Shown here in pieces: positions 11,214 to 60,798 of a stretch of 64,000 nucleotides of DNA. Numbering within the stretch: position 1 is the first letter of the stretch; every line of letters begins with the position of its first letter. Under the pieces are notes generated by a model, which was not told the origin of the DNA, did no database searches, and saw nothing but the letters and a program-made list of their open reading frames with translations. The stretch is from positions 186,001 to 250,000 of IMG/VR virus record IMGVR_UViG_3300042558_003926. One strand, 5' to 3'. A program made the translations under genes and the position numbers.

Positions 11214-12752
11214 TTGTATAAAATGATGAAAAGCCTTAGCTTCCGAACTTTTTTTGAAGCTGTAGATCCTCTTAATGAGAGTCTTCAACCAGCCAAAGAT
11301 TATCTATTAAAGAAACATGCAGACAAAAAGGAGATAAAAATCTCAGATATTCCAGAGGAAGACAAGAGAAGGATTCTTCAGAACCCTAGATATATTCAGG
11401 TTCGAGATTTAACTCAGAAGAATACTGGGTATACGCTACCATTCTTAAAGTTCTATCTGGAACAGAATGCAACGCTAGAGGAACTACAGGAGATCTTCGC
11501 TCTGTTAACAAAATACAAGAACACTTTATCAGACCTTTCAATGTCTGTTGGTGACTATTCTAAATACGTACCAGGTGAGGATGACGAAGAGACTAAACCG
11601 GGATATGAACTTCTTGGTGATGAGCTAAGAAGCTTTGAAAGAAGAAAGAAGGTTAAAGATTTCTTCCAAGAGATGACTCCGAGAATGAAGAAAGAATTCA
11701 ACAAGGCATCGGAAGAAGAAATTGAGGACCTAACTGCAATATCTAACCAGTTAAAGACACTACCTGATGTTGACGGTGAGAATGCTTGGAAGTCTTTTTC
11801 TAAGAATATGAAGAAGTATGACGATACTAGAACATACACTGAATATTCAAATTCACGTACAGCATTCCTGGATATTAAAAAGGATGCTCTTAACTTTATA
11901 GAAGCATGGGGTAAAGGAGACGATGAGCTTCTAGCATCGCTGAAAAAATTAGGACCACAAGCTGGTATTCTCTATGCTAAAAACAAGTATATTGCAATGT
12001 CTGCAAGAACACCGGAAGCAAATAGAGCAGTTTGTTCTGATACTGGCTGGTGTATTAAAACGGACTCTACATTCTGGTCATACGGTGGAGGTAGAATCCA
12101 ATTAAATATTATCGATAGAAACCGTCCGGTTTCTGATCCTAAGAGTTTGCTTGGTATCACAATAAACCCAGATGGAAGTGTACACACATCCCACGATAGA
12201 CCAAATTCAAGAGTTAGCGGAAGAACTTATGTTGAAATTCTCAAGCAATATTACCCGCAGGAACTTGTTGATGCAGTTAAGGAAAGATTTGATAGAGAGG
12301 TTTCAATTAAGCTTGCTTTAGAGAAATACTTTAGAGATTCTTCCGGTCTAGACACTAAGAAAATCATAGAATCTCTAATCACATTAAGCAAAGGATTCCT
12401 ATCTGGAGCGGTTCCGCCGGAAGACTGGGAACAAATCTCAGGAACTGTTGCTGAAATTATCTTCATAGAAAGAAAACTGACCAAGAGCGAGTTCATGAAA
12501 GTATTTAGGGATCATGGAATTTTCTCAGCTGCAACTTGGCACGTTTTCGATGCTATTGTTGGCACTGATTATTCCAAAGATGATATGGAAAAAATCGGGG
12601 AATCAGTTAAGAGAAATCTGAAGAACATGCAGGATCTTATCGATCTTAAAAAACAGGGTGTCCTAGATATTAAACCGAAGGATATGGAAAGCATGGAGGA
12701 AATTATCAAAAACCGAGATGAGGTTATGTCGGAGATCTCTAAAAGAATGTAA
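11214..12752 (+). CDS. Hypothetical protein with CTS-like tag
   Basis: MKSLSFRTFFEAVDPLNES; internal TPEANRAVCSDTGWCI segment. Confidence 0.65.
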   Translation: MYKMMKSLSFRTFFEAVDPLNESLQPAKDYLLKKHADKKEIKISDIPEEDKRRILQNPRYIQVRDLTQKNTGYTLPFLKFYLEQNATLEELQEIFALLTKYKNTLSDLSMSVGDYSKYVPGEDDEETKPGYELLGDELRSFERRKKVKDFFQEMTPRMKKEFNKASEEEIEDLTAISNQLKTLPDVDGENAWKSFSKNMKKYDDTRTYTEYSNSRTAFLDIKKDALNFIEAWGKGDDELLASLKKLGPQAGILYAKNKYIAMSARTPEANRAVCSDTGWCIKTDSTFWSYGGGRIQLNIIDRNRPVSDPKSLLGITINPDGSVHTSHDRPNSRVSGRTYVEILKQYYPQELVDAVKERFDREVSIKLALEKYFRDSSGLDTKKIIESLITLSKGFLSGAVPPEDWEQISGTVAEIIFIERKLTKSEFMKVFRDHGIFSAATWHVFDAIVGTDYSKDDMEKIGESVKRNLKNMQDLIDLKKQGVLDIKPKDMESMEEIIKNRDEVMSEISKRM

Positions 12753-20280: not shown

Positions 20281-20389
20281 GAGGTTAGAACTATGGTGGA
20301 TCGCTTTCGATTCACCCAGATTCTATCCAGAGGGTAGAACCCATCTAAAAGGTAATTGGTTCTGGAGAAATAGAAAAAAATAAAAAATA

Positions 20390-20842
20390 ATGGAAAAGAC
20401 AAATTCTAGAAACGAGAACTCTGACGTTCTAAAGCCTACCCTCTTTATAGTGAGAGGTATACCAGGCTCTGGTAAATCTACATTTGCGAATCACATCTGG
20501 AACGAATATGCAATCTGCGAGGCAGATAAGTTCTTCTATGACAAAGAGGGAAACTACAACTTCGATGTCTCTAGATTAAGAGAAGCCCACGAATGGTGCA
20601 GAAAAGAAGTAGAGACTAGAATGCAGGACAATAAGGTCAATCCTCAGTTTTATCCGGAGATAGTAGTCTCCAATACATCCACTCAGGAGTGGGAGATGAA
20701 AGCATACTTTGATCTTGCCGAGAGATACGGGTATCGCGTGGTTTCCCTAATAGTTGAGAACAGACATGGTGCTAAAAACACCCACAATGTTCCTGATGAG
20801 GTATTGGATAACATGAGAAGTAGATTTGAGATTAAGCTATAA
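20390..20842 (+). CDS. P-loop kinase (polynucleotide kinase-like, AAA_33 type)
   Basis: RGIPGSGKST, CEAD, AHEWC, VVSNT. Confidence 0.85.
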   Translation: MEKTNSRNENSDVLKPTLFIVRGIPGSGKSTFANHIWNEYAICEADKFFYDKEGNYNFDVSRLREAHEWCRKEVETRMQDNKVNPQFYPEIVVSNTSTQEWEMKAYFDLAERYGYRVVSLIVENRHGAKNTHNVPDEVLDNMRSRFEIKL

Positions 20843-27635: not shown

Positions 27636-28675
27636 GAATTTTAATAACCGGAGGTGCGGGGTACATTGGATCTCACACCGCAGTAGAAGCTTTAAGGGAG
27701 GGACACGATGTTGTAATCTTGGACTCATTCATAAATTCAGATAGATCTGCTGTAGAGAATATAGAAAAAGCCAGCGGAAAGAAAGTAGATCTAGTAGAAT
27801 GTGATCTCAGCTTACCTATGCACATGGTTTTTGAAAAATTAGACTCTCTTGATCCTAATTTTGATTCGGTGATACACTTTGCAGCATTAAAATCTTCTCC
27901 AGAATCGGTTTCCAATCCAATAGAATATTATGATAACAATCTGAAATCACTTCTTAATATTCTGAAATTCTGCAAGATTCGGAATGTTAAAAATTTTATA
28001 TTCTCAAGTTCCGCTACTGTTTATGGCGATCCCCAATTTTTACCAATTACAGAGGAACATCCAATCGGGAAGGGCACTACTCCCTACGGATCTTCTAAGG
28101 TTATGGGTGAGTGGATAGTTGAGGACACGACAAAATCACAGAACATTAGATCAGTTGCTCTGAGATATTTTAATCCAGCAGGAGCTGATAACAGCTTATT
28201 AATAGGGGAACTACCAAAAGGGAAACCGAGCAACCTTGTCCCCATCATAACACAATCTGCTGCAGGAGTATATGGACCGATGACTATAACAGGGTCGGAT
28301 TTTCCAACTCCTGATGGTACAGCTATTAGGGATTATATACACGTGACAGATCTCGCAATCGCTCATCTAAAAGCTTTATCTTGGCTGGAATCTCAGAATA
28401 TCGGGACTTTCGATTACTTCAACATAGGAACAGGAAAGGGGACATCAGTTTATGAAATGGCGGAAACATTTGTCTTCTGCGTTGAGCCGGATCTTTTAGT
28501 TTGCGAAAGAGGACCAAGAAGGCCAGGAGATCCTGCTGAAGTTTGGTGCGACAGTACCAAGGCTAATTCTATTCTGGGATGGGAGTCTAAATTCGGTGTG
28601 AAGGATATTTTAAATAGCGCATGGGAGTGGGAAAAGAAAATTCGTTGGGAAGATACTGATAATATTTATCACTAA
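27632..28675 (+). CDS. galE: UDP-glucose 4-epimerase
   Basis: ITGGAGYIGSHT, FSSSATVYG, YGSSK, LRYFNPAG, DGTAIRDYIHV, RRPGD. Confidence 0.93.
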   Translation: MRILITGGAGYIGSHTAVEALREGHDVVILDSFINSDRSAVENIEKASGKKVDLVECDLSLPMHMVFEKLDSLDPNFDSVIHFAALKSSPESVSNPIEYYDNNLKSLLNILKFCKIRNVKNFIFSSSATVYGDPQFLPITEEHPIGKGTTPYGSSKVMGEWIVEDTTKSQNIRSVALRYFNPAGADNSLLIGELPKGKPSNLVPIITQSAAGVYGPMTITGSDFPTPDGTAIRDYIHVTDLAIAHLKALSWLESQNIGTFDYFNIGTGKGTSVYEMAETFVFCVEPDLLVCERGPRRPGDPAEVWCDSTKANSILGWESKFGVKDILNSAWEWEKKIRWEDTDNIYH

Positions 28676-43036: not shown

Positions 43037-43086
43037 CTCTTTATATATTCTAAATAAATATATAGATCACAAATAGAATTAAAATA

Positions 43087-43656
43087 ATGGCATCGTCAAT
43101 TAACCCTATATCGGTTACTCTCCATGAGTTGGGATCATATCTAGCAGATAATGGAATAGAAGTAAATCTATGGGGCAGAGGAGCTGCTAAAACGGTAGAT
43201 CATCTCTTACAGGAGATACGATCTGGGGAATGCGAATTAACAGAAACGGAAGATGGATTAATCCGAGTAATCCACGTGGTCTCTGCTAATATCTACTATG
43301 AGGACACATTCGGAATGTTTATTCTAAAAGAGGACAAACAGGTTTTCAAAGGAGGCAGAACAAAAACAAGATCTTTAAACACTTCTCTATCAGAAAAGAT
43401 TGGACCGAATGAAATACCCCTGGAAGGGATCATCCGAGGAATAAAGGAAGAATTAAACATAACGATATCACCAGACCAGATAAAAGAGGTTTCCAAATTT
43501 AATGAGTCTAGGGAATCGAATTCTTTTCCTGGTCTATCTACAATCTATATGGGAACTAGGTTTTCTTGCAGATTAAACAGGGATCAATATAAACCGAATG
43601 GCTATATAGAGGTTCAGAATGACAAGACCGTTTATTTTAAATGGGAGAAGGCTTAA
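43087..43656 (+). CDS. Nudix-like protein
   Basis: LSEKIGPNEIPLEGIIRGIKEELNI (degenerate Nudix box); AATATATAG at 43057-43065. Confidence 0.6.
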   Translation: MASSINPISVTLHELGSYLADNGIEVNLWGRGAAKTVDHLLQEIRSGECELTETEDGLIRVIHVVSANIYYEDTFGMFILKEDKQVFKGGRTKTRSLNTSLSEKIGPNEIPLEGIIRGIKEELNITISPDQIKEVSKFNESRESNSFPGLSTIYMGTRFSCRLNRDQYKPNGYIEVQNDKTVYFKWEKA

Positions 43657-43862
43657 ATAAAAAAGGATCGGAGTAGCGAATTCCGATCCTTAGTAGTCGT
43701 AACTACTCCGGTCCTAAAATGGGGGATTAAACCCGCCGGATATCTTTATGATAATTTATTCGAGGTATTAGCCCTACTGCCAATGGCACCCCGCTAAGAG
43801 TGCCATTGGAGGGAGATGATTCTGACACGAGGTCCGAATTTCTTAAATACCTTCTCTTTCGT
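43657..43862 (-). ncRNA. Candidate structured ncRNA (about 200 nt)
   Basis: No ORF. Late-type promoter at 43863-43871. Several stems (CCAATGGCAC/GTGCCATTGG; GAAGGTATT/AATACCTC; TCCGG/CCGGA; AGTAG/CTACT). Ends in an AGGATCGGA/TCCGATCCT stem plus a U-run. Confidence 0.6.
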
Positions 43863-43896
43863 CTATATATTACAGTTGAGGATAAAAATATGTGAA

Positions 43897-45300
43897 TTAT
43901 TTTAGTGAAATGCTAATATCCCCATAATCGATACTCGTATTCATTTTCTTCTTATGGTGAACCCAATATTTTTCGTGATTGGTGAATTGGGTTTGTTCCT
44001 TGAGCAAAGATAAATTTGTATGAAGAAATCCATTATAATATGGTGGAGTCACTATCTTAGAGAGAATGTTAAATCGGAAATCAATAAATTCTTCTCTAAT
44101 CGATGAAATATCTCCGGTATAAGACTTTATTGCTTGAGATTCATCAACACCTTTTAATATTTTTTCACGAATCTCCTCGCGATTACTATTATGATTAAAT
44201 CCAGGTAGCGAAGCTATTAAGAATTTTTCATTATACTTGGTCCGTTTATCCAGATCCCCCAACATCTCTTGAGCTTTATCAAAGCTGTCAAAAAGATTTT
44301 TTCTGCGTAATTTTTCACAGTTTTTATTCCACAGAATTCTTGGAACCAGAGCAACTTCTTGGAGCAAATCATTAACATACAAATGGACTTTATATGTATT
44401 ATCCGTTGTACCGTCCTCTTTTCTTAATTCTATCCTCAGATTATACCATTTCTTCAATTCAAACTTATAATCTGTGTAGACTGTTTGGGATCCGGAGGCT
44501 AATGGAAAGGCAACCCCTATCGAAAATGGACTTCTTTTCTCTTTATAGGATTCTTTGTATCTATATTTATTGCCTTCCGTCTCGACAGGTATGATAGAGT
44601 AAGGGGCAACTGCTCCTATCGAGATAAAGTTATGAGGAGGATCAGTATAAAGCTTAGTACCCTTTTCATTTTCACCGTTTTCTCGTGAATACTGAAATCT
44701 CATTATCTCCGTACGTCTAGTTGTATTGGTTTTATAGATAGAATCTATCGATCTGTAAAATGTTCTAGTTGGAAATCTATTTAATCTAAATGAACAGCTA
44801 ATCGTATATTCGCTAGTCATCTTATTATCAGTAGAATCATATATCGGTTTCCAGTTATCCTCCGAAAGTTCATTTCTACCCAATATTTGTAAAGTTGGTT
44901 GATGACCAAATGCAAATAGATCATCAGGTAATCCCTTAAATTTTTTATTAGCACCATTAATGGTTGCCTGGTTTATTTCAGTAGAGGTAACAACAATCAG
45001 ATCCGATGCGGATGTTTTTGGCTGATAAGTAAAAACTGTTCTCTTATCATCCTTAGTCCCTACAATCGATTGGACTTTAACTAGAGTTGGAGCATCCACA
45101 AACTTATAAGCATCCTTAGTGGTATTTTCAACCGACTTCATTAACTTATCCTTTAAGTCCGAGTATTTTTGAACCTCTTGTTCGCTCAATTCTTTCTCCC
45201 CCTTAGATTCTATCTTAGTTCTAAGTTTTTCATATTCAGGATAGAATCTTCTAATCTCGCTGGATAGCTCAAGAGCTTTCGATTTATTAACAGAACTCAT
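43897..45300 (-). CDS. Hypothetical protein (possible LamG-like beta-sandwich in the middle)
   Basis: 467-aa ORF; FELKKWYNLRIEL...VHLYVND. Confidence 0.6.
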   Translation of the reverse strand: MSSVNKSKALELSSEIRRFYPEYEKLRTKIESKGEKELSEQEVQKYSDLKDKLMKSVENTTKDAYKFVDAPTLVKVQSIVGTKDDKRTVFTYQPKTSASDLIVVTSTEINQATINGANKKFKGLPDDLFAFGHQPTLQILGRNELSEDNWKPIYDSTDNKMTSEYTISCSFRLNRFPTRTFYRSIDSIYKTNTTRRTEIMRFQYSRENGENEKGTKLYTDPPHNFISIGAVAPYSIIPVETEGNKYRYKESYKEKRSPFSIGVAFPLASGSQTVYTDYKFELKKWYNLRIELRKEDGTTDNTYKVHLYVNDLLQEVALVPRILWNKNCEKLRRKNLFDSFDKAQEMLGDLDKRTKYNEKFLIASLPGFNHNSNREEIREKILKGVDESQAIKSYTGDISSIREEFIDFRFNILSKIVTPPYYNGFLHTNLSLLKEQTQFTNHEKYWVHHKKKMNTSIDYGDISISLK

Positions 45301-47899: not shown

Positions 47900-48361
47900 T
47901 TATCCTATGTAAGTTTTGATGAATTCATCAACACCCATTAATTCTGTGTGACCGTGATGGTCGATACAAAGCAATTTACCTTCAACTAGGTCAAATAAAC
48001 GAGCTTCTTCGTAAACTTGGAAAGAATCACTACCGTTGTTCTCATTACCAAGTCTACCATCTTTAGCTATGTAGTAAGCATAATCCTCTGTGTTAGTGCT
48101 ATTCGGCACCGCCTCAAATTCTCCATTCTCGTCATGAATTACATAACCCATTCCTGTTACATCGACATCGAAGATTTTTAATTCGTCTTCAGTTCCAGGA
48201 AATTCGGCAGCAAGTCTGTCAATAGCACTTTGCAATTTCTCTTTCTGAACTTCGTCGATGATTCCTACTGCTGCATAAGCATCTCCCTGAAAGCAAGTAG
48301 CATATCTTCTACCGGATCTTTGTGTGGGACCGAAGTTCTCAAATAATCTAAGGTGTTTCAT
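47900..48361 (-). CDS. Hypothetical protein with CTS-like tag
   Basis: MKHLRLFENF; GATATATAA at 48382-48390 on the minus strand. Confidence 0.65.
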   Translation of the reverse strand: MKHLRLFENFGPTQRSGRRYATCFQGDAYAAVGIIDEVQKEKLQSAIDRLAAEFPGTEDELKIFDVDVTGMGYVIHDENGEFEAVPNSTNTEDYAYYIAKDGRLGNENNGSDSFQVYEEARLFDLVEGKLLCIDHHGHTELMGVDEFIKTYIG

Positions 48362-48423
48362 TTTAGTTTATTTTTTTTGGTTTATATATCTCCAAATATA
48401 AGGAAGAATTGCGGAAGAATCAT

Positions 48424-49098
48424 TTATATCATACCCTTAAATCCATGGTAAGCCCTTATCAATTCCAGTCTCTTTATTTCTTCCGGCCCCACCCACTCGA
48501 ACTCTGGTTTGTAGAGTAGCATCTGATCCTCTAACGGGATCTCGCTCCAAAGTGACTCTACAGCCTCCTGATAGCTCATCTCATCTTCCATTTGGTAGAA
48601 TATACTCCTGAGTGTATCCTCAGAAACCGGATTATTTACACATTTGAACATCCCTCCGATTTTCTGAGGGGCACCTTCGAGAGAGGTGAGCTGGTTGTTG
48701 CTACAATTGAAATCGCTACCGATTTCCTGTGGTGCTCCCTCCAGTGAGGTAAGCTGGTTGTTGTTACAAAAGAAATCAAGGCCAACTCTCTTTGGTGATC
48801 CCACCAGCGAGGTGAGCTGATTGTCGTCACAATAGAAACCCTCAGCCTCCTGTGGTGCTCCCTCCAGTGAGGTGAGACGGTTGTCCTCGCATGAAAAATA
48901 TGCTCTCACTACACCAAATCTAACTCCTTTAAAATCTGTCAGATCCTGTCCAGTGCAGCTAAAGCTCCCATCCACATCAACAAGTCCGGTATGAGGATTA
49001 ATAGTCCATTTATCAGAGCACTCATCAAGCCACTCGATCTGCTCCGGGGTAAGCTCTACCGCACTCTCAAACATCTTATATGTCTTTAGATTCTTCAT
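48424..49098 (-). CDS. LRR-like repeat protein, paralog 6 of 6 (4 modules)
   Basis: MKNLKTYKMFES tag; xxNQLTSLEGAPQxVGxxFxC repeats; conserved C-terminus. Confidence 0.85.
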   Translation of the reverse strand: MKNLKTYKMFESAVELTPEQIEWLDECSDKWTINPHTGLVDVDGSFSCTGQDLTDFKGVRFGVVRAYFSCEDNRLTSLEGAPQEAEGFYCDDNQLTSLVGSPKRVGLDFFCNNNQLTSLEGAPQEIGSDFNCSNNQLTSLEGAPQKIGGMFKCVNNPVSEDTLRSIFYQMEDEMSYQEAVESLWSEIPLEDQMLLYKPEFEWVGPEEIKRLELIRAYHGFKGMI

Positions 49099-49100
49099 TC

Positions 49101-50156
49101 CTATATCATACCCTTAAATCCTTGGTAAGCCTTTAACGCTTCCAGCTTCCTTCCCTCCTCTGGACTCACCCACTCGAACTCTGGTCTGTACAGCAGAGCC
49201 TGATCCTCTATAGGGATCTCATTCCAGAGTGATTCCATAGCCTGGATGTAACTCTTCCCTTTCTCCATGGGGTATAATATTCTCCTGAGTGTCTCTTCAG
49301 AAACCGGATTGCTCTCGGAATAGAAAATCCCATTAATCTCCCGTGGTGCCCCATCCAGTGAGGTGAGCTGGTTGTTTTCGCAGAAGAAACCCCCTCTGAC
49401 CCGCTGTGGTGCTCCCTCCAGTGAGGTGAGCTGGTTGTTCCTGCAAATGAAATCCTCTCCAACCTCCTGTGGTGCTCCCTCTAGTGTGGTGAGCTGATTG
49501 TGGTCACAACTGAACCAAAATCCAACCTTCTGTGGTGCTCCCACCAGTGAGGTGAGCTGGTTGTTGCTACAATTGAAAGCCTGTCCAACACTCTGCGGTG
49601 CTCCCTCCAGAGAGGTGAGCTGGTTGTTGGTACACTTGAAACTCCCTCTGACCCGCTGTGGTGCTCCCACCAGTGATGTGAGCCGGTTGTTCTCACAATA
49701 GAAATACCCAGCAATCTCCTGTGGTGCTCCCACCAGTGATGTGAGCCGGTTGTTCTGGCAATAGAAATACCCACCAACATCCTGTGGTGCTCCCTCCAGT
49801 GAGGTGAGCTGGTTGTTGCTACAATTGAAATCCTGCCCAACACTCTGTGGTGCTCCCACCAGTGAGGTGAGCTGGTTGTCGTGGCAATAGAAATCCCCTC
49901 CAACATCCTGTGGTGCTCCCTCCAGTGAGGTGAGCTGATTGTTCCGGCAAATGAAATCCTCACTGACCACTCCAAACCTAACGTCTTTAAAATCTGTCAG
50001 ATCCTGTTCAGAGCAATCGAAATCCCCATCCACATCAACCAGTCCGGTTTGTGGATTAATAGTCCATTCATCAGTGCACTTGTCCAACCACTCGATCTGC
50101 TCTGGTGTAAGCTCTACCGCACTCTCAAACATCTTATATGTCTTTAGATTCTTCAT
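49101..50156 (-). CDS. LRR-like repeat protein, paralog 5 of 6 (10 modules)
   Basis: Same architecture. Confidence 0.85.
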   Translation of the reverse strand: MKNLKTYKMFESAVELTPEQIEWLDKCTDEWTINPQTGLVDVDGDFDCSEQDLTDFKDVRFGVVSEDFICRNNQLTSLEGAPQDVGGDFYCHDNQLTSLVGAPQSVGQDFNCSNNQLTSLEGAPQDVGGYFYCQNNRLTSLVGAPQEIAGYFYCENNRLTSLVGAPQRVRGSFKCTNNQLTSLEGAPQSVGQAFNCSNNQLTSLVGAPQKVGFWFSCDHNQLTTLEGAPQEVGEDFICRNNQLTSLEGAPQRVRGGFFCENNQLTSLDGAPREINGIFYSESNPVSEETLRRILYPMEKGKSYIQAMESLWNEIPIEDQALLYRPEFEWVSPEEGRKLEALKAYQGFKGMI

Positions 50157-50157
50157 T

Positions 50158-50844
50158 TTATATCATACCTTTAAATCCTTGGTAAGCTCTTAACGCTTCC
50201 AGCTTCCTTCTCTCCTCTGGACTCACCCACTCGAACTCTGGTCTGTACAACAGAGTCTGATCTTCTAACGGAATCTTGCTCCAGAGTGATTCCACAGCCT
50301 GCATGTGACTCTCCCCTTTCTTCATGAGGGAGAATATTCTCTTGAGTGTTTCATTAGAAACTGGGTTGCCGTAGCAATAGAAAATCAATCTCACCCGCTG
50401 TGGTGCTCCCACTAGAGAAGTGAGCTGGTTGTTGTCACATCTAAAATCCCCTTCAACCTCCCGTGGTGCACCCTCCAGTGAGGTGAGCTGATTGTTGTTA
50501 CAATAGAAATCCCATCCAACCTTCTGTGGTGCTCCCTCCAGTGTGGTGAGCTGGTTGTCACTACAACTGAAACCCCCACCAACCCGCTGTGGTGCTCCCT
50601 CCAGTGTGGTGAGCTGGTTGCCGTAGCAATAGAAATACCCACTGACCACTCCAAACCTAACGTCTTTAAAATCTGGCAGATCCATACGAGAGCAGCCAAA
50701 ATCCCCATCCACATCAACCAGTCCGGTTTGTGGATTGAGTGTCCAGGTACCATCAATGCACTCGTCAAGCCACTCGATCTGCTCTGGTGTAAGTTCTCCT
50801 ACACTCTCAAACAGTTGGCGATATGTCTTTAGATTCTTCATCAT
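50158..50844 (-). CDS. LRR-like repeat protein, paralog 4 of 6 (4 modules)
   Basis: Same architecture; start at 50844 or 50841. Confidence 0.85.
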   Translation of the reverse strand: MMKNLKTYRQLFESVGELTPEQIEWLDECIDGTWTLNPQTGLVDVDGDFGCSRMDLPDFKDVRFGVVSGYFYCYGNQLTTLEGAPQRVGGGFSCSDNQLTTLEGAPQKVGWDFYCNNNQLTSLEGAPREVEGDFRCDNNQLTSLVGAPQRVRLIFYCYGNPVSNETLKRIFSLMKKGESHMQAVESLWSKIPLEDQTLLYRPEFEWVSPEERRKLEALRAYQGFKGMI

Positions 50845-50848
50845 AATA

Positions 50849-51661
50849 CTATATCATACCTTTAAATCCTTGGTAAGCTCTTAACGCTTCCAGTTTTCTT
50901 ACCTCCTCTGGACTCACCCACTCGAACTCTGGTCTGTACAACAGAGCCTGATCCTCTACTGGAATCTCGTTCCAGAGTGTCTCCACAGCCTGAATGTAAC
51001 TCTCCCCTTTCTTCATGAGGGAGAATATGCTCTTAAGAGTCTCCACAGAAACTGGGTTGTTCTCACAATAGAAATAATCCCGTCCGATCTCCAGTGTTGC
51101 TCCCTCCAATGAGGTGAGCTGGTTGTCCCCACAATAGAAATACCCATCCACCTTCTGTGGTGCTCCCTCCAGTGTGGTGAGCTGATTGTTCTCACAATTG
51201 AACCTCCCTCCAACCCGCTGTGGTGCTCCCTTCAGTGAGGTGATCTGGTTGCCGTTACACTCGAAATACCCTCCAACCTTCTGTGGTGCTCCCTCCAGTG
51301 TGGTGAGCTGATTGTTGTTACAAAAGAAACCACTTCTGACCCGCTGTGGTGCTCCCACCAGTGAGGTGAGCTGGTTGTTGCTACAACTGAAATGCTCTCC
51401 AACCTCCTGTGGCGATCCCTCCAATGAGGTGAGCTGGTTGTTCCTACAATTGAAACTCCCACTCACCACTCCAAACTTAACGCCTTTAAAATCTGTCAGG
51501 TCCTGTCTAAAGCAATCGAAGTCTCCTTTCACATCAACCAGTCCTGTTCGTGGATTGATCTTCCAGGTACCATCAGTGAACTTGTCCAGCCACTCGATCT
51601 GCTCTGGTGTGAGCTCTTGTGTGTTCTCAAACATTTGGCGATATGTCTTTAGATTCTTCAT
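50849..51661 (-). CDS. LRR-like repeat protein, paralog 3 of 6 (6 modules)
   Basis: Same architecture. Confidence 0.85.
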   Translation of the reverse strand: MKNLKTYRQMFENTQELTPEQIEWLDKFTDGTWKINPRTGLVDVKGDFDCFRQDLTDFKGVKFGVVSGSFNCRNNQLTSLEGSPQEVGEHFSCSNNQLTSLVGAPQRVRSGFFCNNNQLTTLEGAPQKVGGYFECNGNQITSLKGAPQRVGGRFNCENNQLTTLEGAPQKVDGYFYCGDNQLTSLEGATLEIGRDYFYCENNPVSVETLKSIFSLMKKGESYIQAVETLWNEIPVEDQALLYRPEFEWVSPEEVRKLEALRAYQGFKGMI

Positions 51662-52408
51662 TTATATCATACCTTTAAATCCTTGGTAAGCCTGGAGAGC
51701 TTCCAGCTTTCTTCTCTCCTCTGGACTCACCCACTCGAACTCTGGTCTGTACAGCAGAGCCTGATCCCCTAATGGAATCTCACCCCAGAGAGACTCCACA
51801 GCCTGAAGATAGCTCTCACCCTTCGTCATGGTGGAGAAGATGCTCTTGAGTGTCCCTTTGGAAACTGGGTTGCCCTCACAATTGAAATGCCGTCCGATCT
51901 CCCGTGGTGCTCCCTCCAGTGAGGTGAGCTGGTTGTTACTACAATAGAAATACCTCCCAACCTTCTGTGGTGCTCCCTCCAGTGTGGTGAGCTGATTTCC
52001 CTCACAAATGAAATCACCCTCAACCTTCTGTGGTGCCCCCACCAGTGAGGTGAGCTGGTTGTTGTCACACCTGAAACGCTCTCCTACCTCCTGTGGTGCC
52101 CCCACCAGTGAGGTGAGCTGGTTGTTGTTACAATAGAAACCCTCACCAACCTTCTGTGGTGCTCCCTCCAGTGAGGTGAGCTGGTTGTAGTCACAACCGA
52201 AATCCTTACTCACCACTCCAAACCTAATCCCTTTGAAATCCGTCAGATCATGTTCAGAGCAATCGAAGTCTCCTTTCACATCAACCAGTCCTGTTCGTGG
52301 ATTGATCTTCCAGGTACCATCAATGCACTCGTCAAGCCACTCGATCTGCTCTGGTGTGAGCTCTCCCACACTCTCAAACAGTTGGCTATATGTCTTTAGA
52401 TTCTTCAT
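51662..52408 (-). CDS. LRR-like repeat protein, paralog 2 of 6 (5 modules)
   Basis: Same architecture. Confidence 0.85.
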   Translation of the reverse strand: MKNLKTYSQLFESVGELTPEQIEWLDECIDGTWKINPRTGLVDVKGDFDCSEHDLTDFKGIRFGVVSKDFGCDYNQLTSLEGAPQKVGEGFYCNNNQLTSLVGAPQEVGERFRCDNNQLTSLVGAPQKVEGDFICEGNQLTTLEGAPQKVGRYFYCSNNQLTSLEGAPREIGRHFNCEGNPVSKGTLKSIFSTMTKGESYLQAVESLWGEIPLGDQALLYRPEFEWVSPEERRKLEALQAYQGFKGMI

Positions 52409-53281
52409 TTATATCATGCCTTTAAATCCAGCGTAAGCCTTAATGACATCCAGCTTCTTACCAAACTCTGGACTCACCCACTCGAACTCTGGTCTGTATA
52501 ACAGAGCCTGATCATCTAATGGAATCTCGTTCCAGAGTGTCTCCACAGCCTGCAGGTAGCTATTCCCTTCCTTCGTGAGGGAGAATATGCTCTTGAGTGT
52601 CTCTTCAGAAACGGGGTTTTTCTCACAATAGAAACCCCCTCCAACCTTTTGTGGTGCTCCCTCCAGAGAGGTAAGTTGGTTTCTATCGCAATTGAAACTT
52701 CCACCGACCTCCTGTGGTGCTCCCTCCAGTGAGGTGAGGTTGTTGCCCTCACAAAGGAAACGCTCTCCTACCTCCTGTGGTGCCCCCTCCAGCGAGGTGA
52801 GCTGGTTGTTGTTACAACTGAAACCTCTTCCGACCCGCTGTGGTGCTCCCTCCAGTGAGGTGAGCTGGTTGTCGCTGCAATAGAAATCATGTCCAACCCG
52901 CTGAGGTGCTCCCTCTAGGGAGATGAGCTGGTTGTCCTCACAATTGAAATTCGCTCCGACTTCCTGAGGTGCTCCCACCAGCGAGGTGAGCTGGTTGTAC
53001 CTACAATAGAAATCCTCTCCAACCTTCTGTGGTGCTCCCTCTAGGGAGATGAGCTGGTTGTTGCTGCAATAGAAATACCCACTGACCACTCCAAACCTAA
53101 TCCCTTTGAAATCTGTCAGGTCCTGTTCAGAGCAATTGAAATCCCCATCCACATCAACAAGTCCGGTTTGTGGATTGATCTTCCAGGTACCATCAGTGCA
53201 CTTGTCCAACCACTCGATCTGCTCTGGTGTAAGCTCTCCCACACTCTCAAACAGTTGGCGATACGTCTTCAGATTTTTCAT
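52409..53281 (-). CDS. LRR-like repeat protein, paralog 1 of 6 (7 modules)
   Basis: Same architecture. Confidence 0.85.
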   Translation of the reverse strand: MKNLKTYRQLFESVGELTPEQIEWLDKCTDGTWKINPQTGLVDVDGDFNCSEQDLTDFKGIRFGVVSGYFYCSNNQLISLEGAPQKVGEDFYCRYNQLTSLVGAPQEVGANFNCEDNQLISLEGAPQRVGHDFYCSDNQLTSLEGAPQRVGRGFSCNNNQLTSLEGAPQEVGERFLCEGNNLTSLEGAPQEVGGSFNCDRNQLTSLEGAPQKVGGGFYCEKNPVSEETLKSIFSLTKEGNSYLQAVETLWNEIPLDDQALLYRPEFEWVSPEFGKKLDVIKAYAGFKGMI

Positions 53282-53285
53282 CCCA

Positions 53286-53294
53286 CTATATATC
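53286..53294 (-). promoter_or_regulatory. Putative late promoter GATATATAG driving the LRR array
   Basis: 4 nt upstream of the first paralog. Confidence 0.6.
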
Positions 53295-53420
53295 TCTCAA
53301 TATAAGGCATCATCCCGGTCTAAAAAAAAATGTGTTGGGGGCTTTTGGGACCAAATCCCCAGGAGGGGCCCGCCCACCAAATAGATGTAGTATATGTTCC
53401 GTCTCCTATAGATAGAGGTA

Positions 53421-53843
53421 GTGATAGATAGAGTACAGTCACACACACTAAAGAGCATGAGCACACAATCGCATATAGACAAGGTAAACATGAAACCTAA
53501 TCTACTACCTTATCCACACCATGTAGCAGCACCTAAGATAGAGACAGTAGATCTATCAGCGTTCAATACACTACAGGCACACAAGGTGAGCAAGTCACTA
53601 CAGAAGAGAGCAGAGGAGATAGCTAGTGCTGTGAAATCCCTACAAGAAGACTATGCACTCAACCTACAGCTATACTCTGCAACCAGATCATTCGAGCCTG
53701 TACTAGGAGAGGTGTATCATCTATATGAGAAGGCAGATGGCACCCAGTTCCTAAGTCTCATATCTCCCAGAGAATGGAAGCAGAAGTACCTGTATTCTGG
53801 TGTGCTAAACTCCGATGGTACCTGGACCCGAGTAGATCTGTAG
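53421..53843 (+). CDS. DUF2452-like protein
   Basis: LPYPHHVAAPKI...FEPVLGEVYHLYE...FLSLISPREW; start uncertain (53421, 53457 or 53490). Confidence 0.7.
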   Translation: MIDRVQSHTLKSMSTQSHIDKVNMKPNLLPYPHHVAAPKIETVDLSAFNTLQAHKVSKSLQKRAEEIASAVKSLQEDYALNLQLYSATRSFEPVLGEVYHLYEKADGTQFLSLISPREWKQKYLYSGVLNSDGTWTRVDL

Positions 53844-54048
53844 GAGATCCCAGAACTGATCCCAAACTAACCCCCAACAACATAGTATGTTAGTAAGATA
53901 GTATGCACAGCCATGTTCATCTGAGTGGGAAGCACGTGGAGGCACTCATATAGGTACTCGTATGCGAAAACTTGGCCCTCCCGGCAGCCCCTCTCCAGGG
54001 CCGAGCAACCACCCAGGGTGCGAACAAGGGTGTTCTCGGATAGCCCCG

Positions 54049-54170
54049 TTAGCCCGGGTTAACCACCCCCGCTTAGCCCGGGTTAACCCAGCCTCCCACT
54101 AACCCGGGGTAATTCCTGGTAAGCAATGGTAAAAACTGGAATTTTAGCCCGGGTTAACTAGGTTAACTCG
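54049..54170. repeat. Near-palindromic iterons TTAGCCCGGGTTAAC (3 exact copies plus variants) in a GC-rich non-coding segment
   Basis: Exact copies start at 54049, 54073 and 54144; variant TAACCCGGGGTAA at about 54100; extra GGTTAAC at about 54161. Confidence 0.85.
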
Positions 54171-54395
54171 GCCCGCCCCGAATCCCTAGGATTTCTCGCC
54201 CCGATTCCAGCCTCAGACACCGCGGTTATCTCTTAGGTATCTCGCCTCGCCTCACTCTACCTCTCTCTATAGGATCAGGAGACGGAATCTACTCATGTCT
54301 ACTCTATCTATAGGGAGAAGGATAAGGATAATACATAACTATTTGGGGCGGGTTTCCCACGGTGTTACCCCTCAGAAAACCCCCCGAAGAATTTG

Positions 54396-54404
54396 GATAT
54401 ATAG
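54396..54404 (+). promoter_or_regulatory. Putative late promoter GATATATAG
   Basis: 6 nt upstream of a tagged gene. Confidence 0.55.
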
Positions 54405-54410
54405 ATCACT

Positions 54411-55205
54411 ATGAAACATGTTAAAATATTTGAAGAGTATATCCCAGGAGGCAGAGCCTCTGGCAAGAGCCTAAAGGATCTCGCCAAGATCCACGGTGTA
54501 GGAATCAAGAGCCTGGAGAAGCAGCTGAAGGTTGGCGTAGCCGTTGAGATGGAACACACCAACAGTGAGGCCAAGGCCGAGGAGATAGCTATGGATCACC
54601 TAGCAGAAAACCCACGGTATTACACTCGGCTTATCCGGAAGGGATTCGTGGATGAACCAAAGGCTCTGAAGATCTATAAGGAACTCTATGAGGGAGACTG
54701 GTTTGATAATCTAAGTTACCACCCGGCAAACCAACCAGATGGACCTGATCCAACAAGGGAGATCGAATACACCCCGGCCCAACAGAAGTTTACCACTATG
54801 TCATTCCTAGGTGATAGCAGCATTGGCTTTACTCTGCTGCATGGCAAGGACTCCGTGGGAGGTGGAGCTTGGGTGCTTAACATCGATGAGGTTCCGGATG
54901 ACTATCAGCTGATCACTGTCTATGGAGATGATGAAGAGAATGAGACGGAGATTGATGAGGACACTTGCATCAACTACGCTACTGATCTCTGGGATGCTAG
55001 AGATAGAGATGTTGAGAATGTAGGAGAAGGCATGGAAGGCTGGGAAGATGGTAAGTTGCTATGTAAGCTAGATGCTGAACTGGCAGAGGATTTGATTGGC
55101 ACTATGGAGTTCGTGATGAGAAGAGGTAATTACGGTCCTGGTTCTAATATCAAGAAAAAAGTCTCTGGTGCTGTCTATGAGCTAAGCAAACTATTTGAGC
55201 TGTGA
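54411..55205 (+). CDS. DUF5661-like domain protein with CTS-like tag and acidic C-terminal domain
   Basis: MKHVKIFEEY; KQLKVGVAVEMEHT...AEEIAMDHLAENPRYYTRL; family name recalled from memory. Confidence 0.7.
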   Translation: MKHVKIFEEYIPGGRASGKSLKDLAKIHGVGIKSLEKQLKVGVAVEMEHTNSEAKAEEIAMDHLAENPRYYTRLIRKGFVDEPKALKIYKELYEGDWFDNLSYHPANQPDGPDPTREIEYTPAQQKFTTMSFLGDSSIGFTLLHGKDSVGGGAWVLNIDEVPDDYQLITVYGDDEENETEIDEDTCINYATDLWDARDRDVENVGEGMEGWEDGKLLCKLDAELAEDLIGTMEFVMRRGNYGPGSNIKKKVSGAVYELSKLFEL

Positions 55206-55258
55206 AAGATAGTATCTTCGTAACATACTCTGTGGTCGGGCGCAAAACCTGGCCATTA

Positions 55259-55290
55259 TTTTTTTACCCCGAGTCTAAACGTTATATTTG
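55259..55290 (+). promoter_or_regulatory. Putative early promoter (CCCCG-N11-TATATTTG)
   Basis: Motif copy preceding a 31-aa membrane ORF (ATG at 55297). Confidence 0.7.
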
Positions 55291-55550
55291 AAAGTATGAA
55301 GAATCCAAAAGATAAAAGCGATCTAGTGATAGCACTGATAATAGCTGGATGGTTCTTGGCAATAGGTGTTGTAGCTTATCTCTTTACTTAAGAGCCATCC
55401 CGGCTCTTGCCAATAGATCATGCTATCCCAAAGAATTATAAGACTGGGGCTAAAGGTTAGACCCCTTACCACACCTCACCCACGGTGTTACCCTCTTCAA
55501 CCGCTAAACACAACACCGAACTTCATAAATAGAATTCCGATATATAAAGC

Positions 55551-55766
55551 ATGGGAATCAAAAGATTTAAGTGCTGCAAAGAGAGCAACAGATTTGCCTT
55601 TATGAAACAAGGTAAATTTCTAGTCTTTAGTTTTTTAATCATATGGCTCGGTCTCTCACTACATTTAAACGAGATTAATCCTATTGAATGGCCGAACATC
55701 TATAAGCCATTCCTCTTTCTTTTTATCTGCCCGATGTTCGCGTATCTCTCTCAAGAAAAAGTTTAG
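55551..55766 (+). CDS. Small membrane protein
   Basis: Two hydrophobic segments; GATATATA at 55539-55546. Confidence 0.5.
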   Translation: MGIKRFKCCKESNRFAFMKQGKFLVFSFLIIWLGLSLHLNEINPIEWPNIYKPFLFLFICPMFAYLSQEKV

Positions 55767-55772
55767 TAATTA

Positions 55773-55804
55773 TTTTTTTTCCTGGAACCGAATGGTTATC
55801 TTTG
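55773..55804 (+). promoter_or_regulatory. Putative early promoter (CCTGG-N11-TATCTTTG)
   Basis: Motif copy. Confidence 0.65.
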
Positions 55805-55826
55805 ATTTAACCAAAAAAAGAACACC

Positions 55827-56222
55827 ATGAAAATTACCTTTGAAAAGAAAGAAGCAGAAGAGATCTTCTACAGCGCATTATGCAACGGCTTAGGCTACAT
55901 TGGAGGCTACGGTCTAGTCCTCGACTTCGAAGACAAGGCATACGAAAAAGCAAAGAAAACACTTAAGAAGGCCACGCCTAACGAAACTATCTGTTATGAG
56001 GACGTGCTCATGCAGATCCTCAGAGAAGGAGGAGAGCTGGTTCTGATCGACGAGGAATGCGACGGTGAATACACCAGCCGAATCAAAATGGAAGACGTCT
56101 ATGAAAGACTTCCTCTTACACCCACACGATTCTTAATGGACATGATCAACGAACAGGACGACGCTGAGACAGCAGACTGTATTATCCAGACCGTGTTCTT
56201 TAAAGATATAGTGTTTGGTTAA
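55827..56222 (+). CDS. Conserved phage hypothetical protein
   Basis: Ends DAETADCIIQTVFFKDIVFG. Confidence 0.7.
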   Translation: MKITFEKKEAEEIFYSALCNGLGYIGGYGLVLDFEDKAYEKAKKTLKKATPNETICYEDVLMQILREGGELVLIDEECDGEYTSRIKMEDVYERLPLTPTRFLMDMINEQDDAETADCIIQTVFFKDIVFG

Positions 56223-58616: not shown

Positions 58617-58758
58617 AATTCTAGAAACTCCTTCAATACACCGTGAGAGACTCTCCGAGGTGTAACACATTCTGCTCTGAATATTTTTCTTACGTTTCGA
58701 AAGAAATGAATTGCATCAACAATATATAGAGACATAGCCCAATTTCAAAAGATAAAAG

Positions 58759-58789
58759 AGCGGACACGAATTTACGGTCCGCTTTTTTT
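58759..58789 (+). terminator. Intrinsic terminator
   Basis: AGCGGAC-loop-GTCCGCT then a T-run. Confidence 0.75.
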
Positions 58790-58797
58790 ATGGTTTA

Positions 58798-58829: not shown

Positions 58830-58853
58830 TTGAGTAAATCAAAAGGGTGTATT

Positions 58854-60678: not shown

Positions 60679-60751
60679 AAAATTGATTCACTTTCGAATA
60701 TATAAGTTTCCACTCGGAATCTCAGATTCCGTCCATATACACCCAAAAAAG

Positions 60752-60787
60752 AAATCCTCCGGACGCCAAGCGACTGGAGGGTTTTTT
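60752..60787 (+). terminator. Intrinsic terminator
   Basis: CCTCCGG-loop-CTGGAGG followed by GTTTTTT. Confidence 0.7.
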
Positions 60788-60798
60788 ATCAGAGATTA

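What the first reader, a model, noticed from the sequence alone, without database searches (positions are those of the whole stretch)
43657..43871. Late-promoter-driven structured RNA of about 200 nt with a possible terminator/antiterminator switch
Seen in sequence (minus strand): AATATATAG promoter, then a multi-stem region with no ORF. It has a closing stem GAAGGUAUU/AAUACCUC, CCCU/AGGG extending a perfect 10-bp CCAAUGGCAC/GUGCCAUUGG hairpin, and UCCGG/CCGGA enclosing GGG-UUUAAU-CCC. The 3' end has GGAGUAG, which can pair either with the adjacent CUACU or with CUACUCC inside the terminator hairpin; the second pairing would disrupt termination. Inference: a phage ncRNA of a class I cannot name, possibly switch-like. 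Read-through would run antisense into the Nudix-like gene.
Basis: partly seen in the sequence, partly recalled or inferred. Interest (0 to 1): 0.62.

Follow-up and report, generated by a model that had tools for sequence, protein, structure and literature searches.

The report
Two-module phage RNA with switchable terminator
An uncultivated 290-kb phage carries a real, conserved non-coding RNA gene of about 200 nt, built from two separately conserved folded modules, and the second module is a transcription terminator with a built-in competing helix that could make it a switch.

Summary
On the minus strand of window 43659-43871 there is a promoter-like motif, about 200 nt with no conserved ORF, and an intrinsic terminator. 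The element matches no Rfam family, tRNA or tmRNA.

It is conserved downstream of homologues of the upstream 467-aa gene. It consists of two modules.
- **Module 1 (43763-43859):** two hairpins with strong covariation (14 of 24 pairs show compensatory changes). It also occurs alone in L014/L015. Weak model hits suggest it next to homologues at 24-31% identity.
- **Module 2 (43659-43740):** a nearly invariant cassette of a small junction, a UACG-capped hairpin and a terminator. It also occurs alone in other phage contigs, either behind its own promoter or 9 nt after a gene's stop codon.

It is 12 of 13 bp, lies 1.6-5.6 kcal/mol above the terminator fold, and ranks first among 78 terminators of this genome. 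No compensatory change supports it, and no RNA data exist.

"Late" timing of the promoter is unproven. The motif is a genome-wide phage promoter element.

My best reading is a new structured RNA family whose 3' module is a portable, possibly conditional terminator cassette. Function is untested.

The parts
43863..43871 (-). Promoter-like motif AATATATAG (core ATATATAG, a -10-like element with no -35)
   Evidence: Genome-wide enrichment in intergenic DNA and a fixed position upstream of start codons. Conserved as ATATATAG/C at the same place in L004, L005, L006/L016 and L007/L008, while the surrounding spacer is not conserved.
43859..43859 (-). Inferred transcription start (an A, 4 nt after the motif)
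   Evidence: Inference. 41 of 65 intergenic motifs have an A at this offset. 17 genes have their start codon 3-6 nt after the motif, which implies leaderless mRNAs. In L017 the same offset falls on the first conserved base of module 2.
43763..43859 (-). Module 1 (5' module): leader, conserved AUUUAAGAA, P2, AUCAU joiner, P3, and a lineage-specific P1
   Evidence: Model R2 scores 73-112 bits in homologous loci. 97.2% of cells are paired, 14 of 24 pairs have compensatory changes, 0 of 500 shuffles reach this, and slid controls give 27-49%.
43819..43839 (-). P2 hairpin (AUUCGGAC / GUCAGAAU, loop CUCGU)
   Evidence: RNAalifold. 4 of 8 pairs have compensatory changes.
43772..43813 (-). P3 hairpin: P3a CCCU/AGGG, P3b 13 bp, loop UAGC (43796-43793), 3' bulge CAGU (43779-43776)
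   Evidence: 9 of 13 P3b pairs and 1 of 3 P3a pairs have compensatory changes. The AGU-containing bulge is kept in all close variants, and also in L010, L061 and L022 and in L068 by eye.
43846..43852 (-). P1 5' strand AGGUAUU (pairs with 43769-43763)
   Evidence: Duplex of -6.7 kcal/mol in the window. L016 has GAGAUU/AAUCUC, a compensatory version. No equivalent in L005, L008 or L014. Not a conserved feature of the family.
43741..43762 (-). A/U-rich linker between the modules, ending in the conserved AAAGAUAU
43659..43740 (-). Module 2 (3' module): P4 junction, P5 hairpin, intrinsic terminator and U-run
   Evidence: Model R1 scores 92-125 bits in L005, L016, L017, L085-L094 and L070-L074. It is nearly invariant while the neighbouring protein is only 53-65% identical.
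43707..43740 (-). P4: UCCGG/CCGGA closing GGG-UUUAAU-CCC and an unpaired CCAUUUUAGGA
   Evidence: All pairs are invariant in 6 variants, so covariation cannot test them. The 2-bp CC/GG mini-hairpin that RNAalifold predicts is not supported in L070, which has one C and one U fewer.
43692..43707 (-). P5 hairpin AGUAGU-UACG-ACUACU
   Evidence: One compensatory pair (A-U to G-C) and one G-C to G-U change in the L017, L085 and L070 lineages.
43659..43690 (-). Intrinsic terminator: AGGAUCGGA / UCCGAUCCU, loop AUUCGCUAC, then U6 (43664-43659)
   Evidence: three compensatory pairs. The CUAC half of the loop is invariant, whereas the 5' half tolerates U to C in L085.
43703..43715 (-). Competing strand X (AGGACCGGAGUAG), which can pair with 43676-43664
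43664..43676 (-). Strand Z (CUACUCCGAUCCU): the terminator's loop 3' half plus its 3' strand, partner of X in the alternative fold
43897..45300 (-). Upstream 467-aa gene. Probably structural: N-terminal helices plus a ConA/LamG-like beta-sandwich. Module 1 follows its family.
   Evidence: Homologues. AF2 model with pLDDT 56. Weak LamG and lectin fold matches. No Pfam or PHROG hit.
43087..43656 (+). Convergent 189-aa gene ('Nudix-like'), present only in this lineage (window, L002/L003)
   Evidence: No Pfam or PHROG hit. Nearest Atlas clusters are NUDIX, score 0.98.

Best explanation
**What it is.** This is a self-contained non-coding transcription unit of an uncultivated 289.7-kb phage. A phage-specific -10-like promoter (ATATATAG) starts an RNA near 43859. 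The RNA ends about 200 nt later at an intrinsic terminator (U-run 43664-43659). The RNA is a fusion of two RNA modules that evolve and move separately.

**Module 1.** It has two covarying hairpins, P2 and P3, and P3 carries an invariant AGU-containing bulge. Module 1 stays next to the LamG-like 467-aa structural gene family.

**Module 2.** It is a portable, almost invariant terminator cassette: a small junction (P4), a UACG-capped hairpin (P5), and the terminator.

**The two folds.** The 3' strand of P4 together with the 5' strand of P5 is 12-of-13 complementary to the terminator's loop and 3' strand. The cassette therefore has two near-isoenergetic folds, one terminating and one not.

**Mechanism I commit to (inferred, not shown).** Module 2 is a conditional terminator or insulator placed between phage transcription units. 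By default P4 and P5 fold first and the terminator forms, which releases the roughly 200-nt RNA. An unknown factor, probably a phage or host protein or RNA that recognises the invariant P4/P5 sequence, could keep P4/P5 from forming. That would free the competing strand, abolish the terminator and let RNA polymerase read through. In this window read-through would run antisense into the convergent 189-aa gene. In the other lineages it would run into the next same-strand gene.

**Shown versus inferred.** Shown by computation: the conservation, the structures, the modularity, and the existence and rarity of the competing helix. Inferred: that the RNA is made, where it starts, that the switch operates, and what triggers it.
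For: **Conservation**
- The intergenic element is conserved downstream of homologues of the 467-aa gene at 53-97% identity, whatever gene follows it.

**Structure**
- Module 1: 97.2% of cells paired, 14 of 24 pairs with compensatory changes, 0 of 500 shuffles as good.
- Module 2, terminator fold: 100% of 138 cells paired, with 4 compensatory pairs.

**Modularity**
- Module 1 occurs alone with a different terminator in L014/L015.
- Module 1 probably also occurs in L010, L061 and L022 (27.5, 17.1 and 14.1 bits; E 7e-4 to 3e-3, 0.1-0.5 and 0.5-2.4). Each is the top hit of its locus and falls in the gap right after the homologous gene.
- Module 2 occurs alone behind its own promoter in L017 and L085-L094, and 9 nt after the stop codon of a 175-aa gene in L070-L074.

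**Promoter**
- The motif is enriched about tenfold in intergenic DNA.
- The phage has three sigma-70-type ORFs, and no match to the RNA polymerase beta-subunit domain (Rpb2_6) was found.

**Competing helix**
- The forced alternative fold lies only 1.6-5.6 kcal/mol above the MFE.
- The duplex is -18.6 kcal/mol against -9.4 +/- 2.1 for shuffles, 0 of 1000 as good.
- This terminator ranks 1 of 78 in the genome for such complementarity: z = -5.6, next best -3.5, median 0.1.
- 12 of 13 pairs are kept in all 6 variants, although the terminator stem changed in the L017, L085 and L070 lineages. Slid controls give 38-62%.
- In the terminator loop only the half that joins the competing helix (CUAC) is invariant.

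**Context**
- In all five non-window lineages the U-run is followed within 1-3 nt by the promoter of the next same-strand gene. This fits a terminate-and-restart boundary.
Against: - No RNA data. No RNA sequencing run was listed, so transcript ends, termination and read-through are all unobserved.
- The competing helix has no compensatory (double) change, only wobble-compatible single changes.
- Its predicted equilibrium occupancy is 3% in the window, 0% in L016 and 0.2% in L017.
- The variants represent few independent lineages, essentially two clades for module 2.
- Downstream genes differ and carry their own promoters, so read-through is not needed to express them.
- In the window lineage the downstream gene is convergent.
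- No trigger is identified.
- The similarity of the competing strand to the terminator's 5' strand (AGGAYCGGA twice) could instead reflect two copies of a protein-binding site.
Confidence: 0.45

Rival explanations
1. It is a trans-acting stable small RNA, acting as a decoy, a protein-binding RNA or a base-pairing regulator. The two modules are the functional bodies and the terminator merely ends the RNA. The competing helix is a by-product or serves a conformational change after release.
For: - It has its own conserved promoter and terminator with no ORF.
- The unit is kept intact even where the downstream gene is convergent.
- Unpaired nucleotides are invariant (AUUUAAGAA, AUCAU, the AGU bulge, CCAUUUUAGGA).
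- Module 2 is far more conserved than the neighbouring proteins.
Against: - No complementary target longer than 12 nt in the phage genome, which is chance level.
- No match of the module-2 core in 185,579 prokaryotic species genomes, so no host RNA or CRISPR repeat that it could mimic was found.
- In L070-L074 module 2 has no promoter and sits in a gene's 3' UTR.
- No partner protein is identified.
Confidence: 0.3
2. It is a passive 3'-end element: a multi-hairpin terminator, stabiliser, insulator or processing site for the highly expressed structural gene upstream. One version would resemble T7 RNase III sites next to promoters, with P3 and its asymmetric internal loop as the cleavage signal.
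For: - Module 1 always follows the same gene family. In L010 its P3 is itself followed by a U-run.
- Distant homologues carry other conserved multi-hairpin elements at the same place.
- Module 2 sits in a 3' UTR in L070.
- P3 is a hairpin of 16-20 bp with an asymmetric internal loop, placed beside a promoter. The resemblance to T7 RNase III sites comes from my own knowledge, not from a test.
Against: - A promoter motif is conserved between the stop codon and module 1 in five lineages.
- Module 2 stands behind a divergent promoter with no upstream same-strand gene in L017 and L085.
- Near-total sequence invariance and the exceptional competing helix are more than a passive hairpin needs.
Confidence: 0.17
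3. It is a metabolite-sensing riboswitch. P4 or module 1 would be the aptamer and the terminator/antiterminator pair the expression platform.
For: - Invariant junction nucleotides.
- Two mutually exclusive folds.
Against: - Downstream genes are unrelated to each other: LamG-like tail-fibre type, a 116-aa gene, an FMN-reductase-like gene, or a convergent gene. Each has its own promoter.
- No Rfam riboswitch hit even at E = 10.
Confidence: 0.05
4. It is not a functional RNA: a short protein-coding gene, or chance hairpins in an AT-rich spacer.
For: A 33-codon GTG ORF overlaps 43727-43828.
Against: - ORFs differ in frame, start and length among homologues, and are absent in L014.
- Substitutions are compensatory in stems.
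- Indels are not multiples of three.
Confidence: 0.03

Closest known systems
Terminator/antiterminator attenuators (riboswitch expression platforms; protein-controlled RAT-terminator pairs of the BglG/LicT type)
   Same: An intrinsic terminator whose 3' strand can instead pair with an upstream segment, giving two mutually exclusive folds.
   Different: No consistent regulated gene. Downstream genes have their own promoters. No known ligand or binding protein. No sequence or model match to any Rfam family. The cassette moves between contexts as a unit.
Lambda PR'-tR' unit (the 194-nt terminated '6S' transcript that is read through when Q modifies RNA polymerase); from my own knowledge
   Same: A promoter followed by a short non-coding transcript of about 200 nt that ends at a terminator placed before late or structural genes. 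Read-through would need a factor.
   Different: No Q-like factor was searched for, and no qut-like site was identified. Here the following gene has its own promoter. In the window the following gene is convergent.
Phage T7 RNase III processing hairpins next to promoters; from my own knowledge
   Same: An intergenic hairpin of about two helical turns with an asymmetric internal loop, placed just after a promoter and between highly expressed genes (P3 of module 1).
   Different: Cleavage is untested. Conserved flanking single strands and the P2 hairpin have no T7 counterpart. No sequence similarity.
Stable small phage RNAs of unknown function (for example T4 RNA C and RNA D); from my own knowledge
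   Same: Phage-encoded, structured, non-coding and of unknown function.
   Different: No sequence relation was tested or found. The phage collection gave no DNA match.

Membership tests
Any Rfam 15 family | Covariance-model score at or above the family's gathering score | tested here: not met
   No hit in the whole window at gathering thresholds. In 43500-44000 at E <= 10 there were only 11-19-bit hits to LhrC, ncr1241, Afu_191 and WT1-AS_5, against gathering scores of 60-110. Those hits were driven by the terminator.
tRNA / tmRNA / tRNA-like | Cloverleaf or tmRNA architecture recognised by ARAGORN | tested here: not met
   No tRNA or tmRNA in the window. The GGG-UUYAAU-CCC hairpin has only 3 bp and lacks the conserved T-loop C in most variants.
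Intrinsic (factor-independent) terminator | G+C-rich hairpin immediately followed by a U-run | tested here: met
   A stem of 9-10 bp plus U6 at 43690-43659. Three compensatory pairs among homologues. The simple scanner missed it because its loop is 9 nt.
Terminator/antiterminator switch | A competing helix that sequesters the terminator's 3' strand, conserved among homologues | tested here: met
   12 of 13 pairs in all six variants. 1.6-5.6 kcal/mol above the MFE. Rank 1 of 78 terminators.
Terminator/antiterminator switch | Covariation (double compensatory changes) in the competing helix | tested here: inconclusive
   Zero double changes. The only changes are G-C to G-U and A-U to G-U, plus a mismatch that shifts by one position. 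Too few independent lineages to decide.
Terminator/antiterminator switch | Condition-dependent read-through and a defined trigger | not testable with these tools
   No RNA run was listed. Needs termination assays.
Riboswitch | Consistent association with a functional class of downstream genes | tested here: not met
   Downstream genes differ and have their own promoters. In the window the downstream gene is convergent.
Independent sRNA gene | Own promoter and own terminator, no ORF | tested here: met
   For the window, L005, L016, L008, L017 and L085. Not met for module 2 in L070-L074, where no promoter is present.
Base-pairing sRNA | Conserved complementarity to a target mRNA | tested here: not met
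   The longest complementary matches in the phage genome are 12 nt, which is chance level. Host targets could not be searched because the host is unknown.
RNA anti-CRISPR / host-RNA mimic | Near-identity to a host CRISPR repeat or other host RNA | tested here: not met
   Two exact-pattern scans of 185,579 species genomes with the module-2 core gave no match. Only exact patterns were searched, and the host may not be represented.
T4-type late promoter | Single -10-like element, no -35, used for late genes through a phage sigma factor | tested here: inconclusive
   A single ATATATA(G/C/A) element is enriched upstream of genes, including structural ones. Three sigma-70-like ORFs are present. Timing is unknown, and the motif differs from TATAAATA, which is not enriched (5 of 39 occurrences intergenic).

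The most novel reading that the evidence does not exclude
Module 2 is a portable, factor-controlled terminator switch, a 'regulated insulator cassette'. A clade of freshwater jumbo phages moves it between transcription-unit boundaries to time or dose late gene expression. Module 1 is a separate RNA partner tied to a LamG-like virion protein family across deep divergence. The two-module RNA in this window couples the two.
Probability: 0.3. Interest if true: 0.72.

Novelty: new variant of a known kind. Interest (0 to 1): 0.55.

Why it matters
Very few non-coding RNAs of jumbo phages are characterised, and none from this uncultivated freshwater group, whose helicase hits hint at a Bacteroidota host. 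This locus offers three things.
- **A new structured RNA family.** It has clean covariation and sits beside a structural gene family.
- **An ultra-conserved terminator cassette.** It is about 80 nt long, has a built-in competing helix, and appears in at least four different genomic contexts. If it is a real switch, it would be a compact, transferable regulatory part and a handle on how these phages separate transcription units.
- **A working promoter model.** Defined promoter and leaderless-start rules for the phage make it possible to annotate other small transcripts.

If the competing helix proves irrelevant, what remains is a well-supported but functionally anonymous phage RNA family, which is of moderate interest.

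Tried and rejected
**Database and homology searches that found nothing**
- Rfam at gathering and at permissive thresholds: nothing.
- tRNA/tmRNA: none.
- GenBank phages: no match by DNA, or by protein with the upstream 467-aa gene as query.
- Single-protein locus searches in IMG/VR: nothing.
- Host or CRISPR-repeat mimicry: two exact-pattern scans of species genomes gave no match.
- Expression: no RNA run was listed.

**Pattern scans that gave only chance or uncertain hits**
- Looser pattern scans of IMG/VR returned only chance hits in coding DNA, L036-L047.
- One isolated partial match, L069.

**Ideas tested and dropped**
- Extra copies in the same genome: none. nhmmer and the two models gave one copy each in G000 and G001, and module 2 only in G002.
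- Antisense targets in the phage genome: no match longer than 12 nt.
- Diversity-generating retroelement or other repeats near the locus: none.
- RNA-guided nuclease idea for the 467-aa protein: the model shows helices plus a lectin-like sandwich, not a nuclease.
- Kissing-dimer idea for the palindromic GAAUUC in the terminator loop: the palindrome is broken in L085.
- Loop-to-leader or loop-to-module-2 pseudoknots: examined by eye, the variants do not covary.
- K-turn or sarcin-ricin reading of the AGU bulge: by eye, the required G.A pairs or GAA strand are absent.
- P1 closing stem as a family feature: rejected.
- Homology between module 2 and the three-hairpin element of L026-L066: not supported by alignment.
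- Multisubunit or T7-type phage RNA polymerase: no Rpb2_6 hit. The PF00940 search is uninformative because its controls also failed.

Full report
**Context**

The window is bases 186001-250000 of a 289,651-bp IMG/VR virus record with 37% G+C. It has no DNA relative among GenBank phages, and the upstream 467-aa protein has no match there either. Its Dda-like helicase is about 30% identical to helicases of crAss-like and Flavobacterium phages, which hints weakly at a Bacteroidota host.

The finding lies in a 240-nt gap. On one side is a 467-aa ORF on the minus strand (43897-45300). On the other is a convergent 189-aa ORF on the plus strand (43087-43656).

**The observation**

The 215-nt stretch folds at -65.4 kcal/mol, against -51.3 +/- 4.5 for dinucleotide shuffles (z = -3.15).

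Four corrections apply.
- A further hairpin, P2 (43839-43819), was missed.
- The long hairpin runs 13 bp up to a UAGC tetraloop.
- The 'closing stem' is lineage-specific.
- The alternative pairing is longer than described.

No ORF is conserved in frame, start or length among homologues.

**Homologues and covariation**

The 467-aa protein has relatives at 97, 65, 62, 55, 54, 53, 52 and 29% identity in freshwater metagenomes. In every contig that extends past the gene, a 240-257-nt gap follows it, although the next gene differs in identity and orientation. The gap aligns along its whole length.

A covariance model of the 5' part (R2) recovers all of these at 73-112 bits. On that alignment:
- 97.2% of cells are paired.
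- 14 of 24 pairs show compensatory changes.
- No shuffle out of 500 reaches these values.
- Sliding the partners drops pairing to 27-49%.

This is a genuine structured RNA. The alignment was fitted to the model, which favours the structure somewhat, but the MAFFT/RNAalifold analysis gave the same helices with 11 compensatory pairs.

**Two modules**

*Module 1.*
- It spans 43763-43859. It consists of the conserved AUUUAAGAA, P2, an AUCAU joiner, and P3 with a (C/G)AGU bulge and a UAGC loop.
- It occurs alone, followed by an unrelated G+C-rich terminator, in L014/L015.
- Weak model hits (27.5, 17.1 and 14.1 bits) are each the best hit of their locus. Each falls exactly in the gap after homologues of the gene that share 24-31% identity (L010, L061, L022).
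- These hits share the joiner, the P3a/P3b arrangement and the AGU bulge. L068 looks the same by eye.
- Module 1 therefore follows this LamG-like gene family, most likely over deep divergence; the distant cases rest on weak model hits.
- The protein model is poor (pLDDT 56). It shows N-terminal helices and a lectin-like beta-sandwich. Neighbouring genes are LamG-type and 'tail/virion structural'.

*Module 2.*
- It spans 43659-43740: P4, P5 and the terminator.
- It is almost invariant between phages whose flanking protein is only 53-65% identical.
- It also occurs without module 1 in two settings. In L017 and L085-L094 it sits behind its own ATATATAC promoter, next to a divergent 151-aa gene. 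In L070-L074 it starts 9 nt after the stop codon of a 175-aa gene, with no promoter.
- In all five non-window lineages its U-run is followed within 1-3 nt by the promoter of the next same-strand gene.
- Each genome searched holds one copy.

**Promoter**

- ATATATA[ACG] occurs 88 times in the genome, and 65 of these lie in the 7.3% that is intergenic.
- The extended consensus is T at -3, R at -1, then ATATATA followed by G, C or A.
- 41 of 65 sites have an A four nucleotides after the motif.
- 17 genes start 3-6 nt after the motif, which implies leaderless mRNAs.
- The element's promoter is the only one with no same-strand ORF within 800 nt.
- The motif is conserved upstream of the RNA in five lineages, while the spacer around it is not.
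- The phage has three sigma-70 region-2 ORFs. No match to the RNA polymerase beta-subunit domain (Rpb2_6) was found. The T7-type search was uninformative.

The promoter is therefore probably read by host polymerase with a phage sigma factor. Whether it is 'late' is not shown. It precedes structural genes, and it also precedes the ORF at window 11214-12752, upstream of the helicase gene.

**Terminator and competing helix**

The terminator fold of module 2 is 100% paired in six distinct variants. It has compensatory changes in P5 (one pair) and in the terminator stem (three pairs). These reflect essentially two clades.

The segment 43715-43703 (AGGACCGGAGUAG) can instead pair with 43676-43664 (CUACUCCGAUCCU). 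The evidence on this alternative is as follows.
- The forced alternative fold lies 1.6, 2.2, 5.6 and 4.0 kcal/mol above the MFE in the four variants first tested.
- The duplex is far stronger than with shuffled upstream sequence: 0, 3, 0 and 30 of 1000 shuffles are as good.
- Among 78 terminator-like hairpins of this genome, this one ranks first for upstream complementarity (z = -5.6, next -3.5, median 0.1).
- 12 of 13 pairs persist in all six variants, although the terminator stem was rewritten in one clade. The single mismatch simply moves by one position.
- In the terminator loop, the half that joins the competing helix is invariant, while the other half tolerates change.

Against the switch:
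- There are no double compensatory changes.
- Predicted equilibrium occupancy is 3%, 0% and 0.2% in the window, L016 and L017. In L005 it is 64%, in a fold where the 5' leader pairs with the U-rich 3' end.
- No trigger is known.
- No RNA data exist.

**Mechanism**

I commit, at about 0.45, to module 2 being a conditional terminator or insulator cassette. By default it terminates and releases the roughly 200-nt RNA. The invariant P4/P5 is then the recognition site for an unknown factor whose action frees the competing strand.

Rivals:
- A trans-acting stable RNA, 0.30. No phage target longer than 12 nt was found, and no host match.
- A passive 3'-end or processing element, 0.17.
- A metabolite riboswitch, 0.05, which fails on gene association.
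- Coding sequence or chance, 0.03.

These readings are not fully exclusive. A terminated RNA can also act in trans.

**Comparison with known systems**

It works like terminator/antiterminator attenuators. In layout it resembles the lambda PR'-tR' terminated transcript. P3 resembles T7 RNase III sites. The last two comparisons come from my own knowledge and are not tests. It is a member of no described RNA family.

**Side points**

- The 'Nudix-like' label of the 189-aa gene has no Pfam or PHROG support.
- The same gene has a 0.98 language-model match to NUDIX-containing clusters, and by eye a partial Nudix-box-like string. I treat the label as a lead only.
- That gene is present only in the window lineage (window, L002/L003) and looks like an insertion between the RNA and the tail-fibre-like gene.

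No alternative genetic code was used. No toxin or animal-virus sequence was involved.

Noticed in passing
window 58722-58790 (+) and 60698-60790 (+); also G000 261464 (+): Further promoter motifs (ATATATAG/A), each followed by a short hairpin plus a T-run and no ORF. These are candidate short terminated transcripts or leader attenuators upstream of the genes at 58830 and 60850.
   Followed up: no
window 48000-56000: G+C is 0.45-0.485 here, against 0.35-0.39 in the rest of the window. This is a compositionally distinct block.
   Followed up: no
G000 280319-280531 (-), 20290-20496 (+), 27795-27974 (+) (outside the window): Three ORFs carry sigma-70 region 2, and no RNA polymerase beta-subunit domain (Rpb2_6) match was found. 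The phage probably redirects host RNA polymerase.
   Followed up: partly
whole genome; in the window e.g. 25117 (-), 29331 (+), 43048 (-), 53293 (-), 55540 (+): 17 of 65 intergenic promoter motifs lie only 3-6 nt before the start codon, which implies widespread leaderless mRNAs.
   Followed up: partly
window 43040-43066: Back-to-back divergent promoter motifs serve the 565-aa tail-protein gene (minus strand) and the 189-aa gene (plus strand).
   Followed up: no
L010 10472-10815 and 11899-11971: The 91-kb phage contig that carries the distant homologue encodes a tmRNA (tag ANVDYSTEYFAVAA) and a tRNA-Met.
   Followed up: no
L026, L027, L028, L030, L033, L062, L065, L066: the 80-95 nt after the stop codon of the LamG-like gene: A different conserved three-hairpin element: a covarying first hairpin, CGUGGU, a second hairpin, then GGGGCGUGAAAGCGCCCC plus a U-run. 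It sits directly after distant homologues of the 467-aa gene. It does not align with module 2.
   Followed up: partly
L069 3070-3112 (-): An isolated match to the P5-loop and terminator-loop pattern in a 170-kb viral contig. There is no recognisable module or U-run, and it partly overlaps an ORF on the other strand. It may be chance or a relic.
   Followed up: partly
L017 3209-4039 (-), L085 155-994 (-), L070 1-808 (-): An FMN-reductase-like gene (PF03358, 24.9 bits) lies one or two genes downstream of the stand-alone module 2 in those phages.
   Followed up: no
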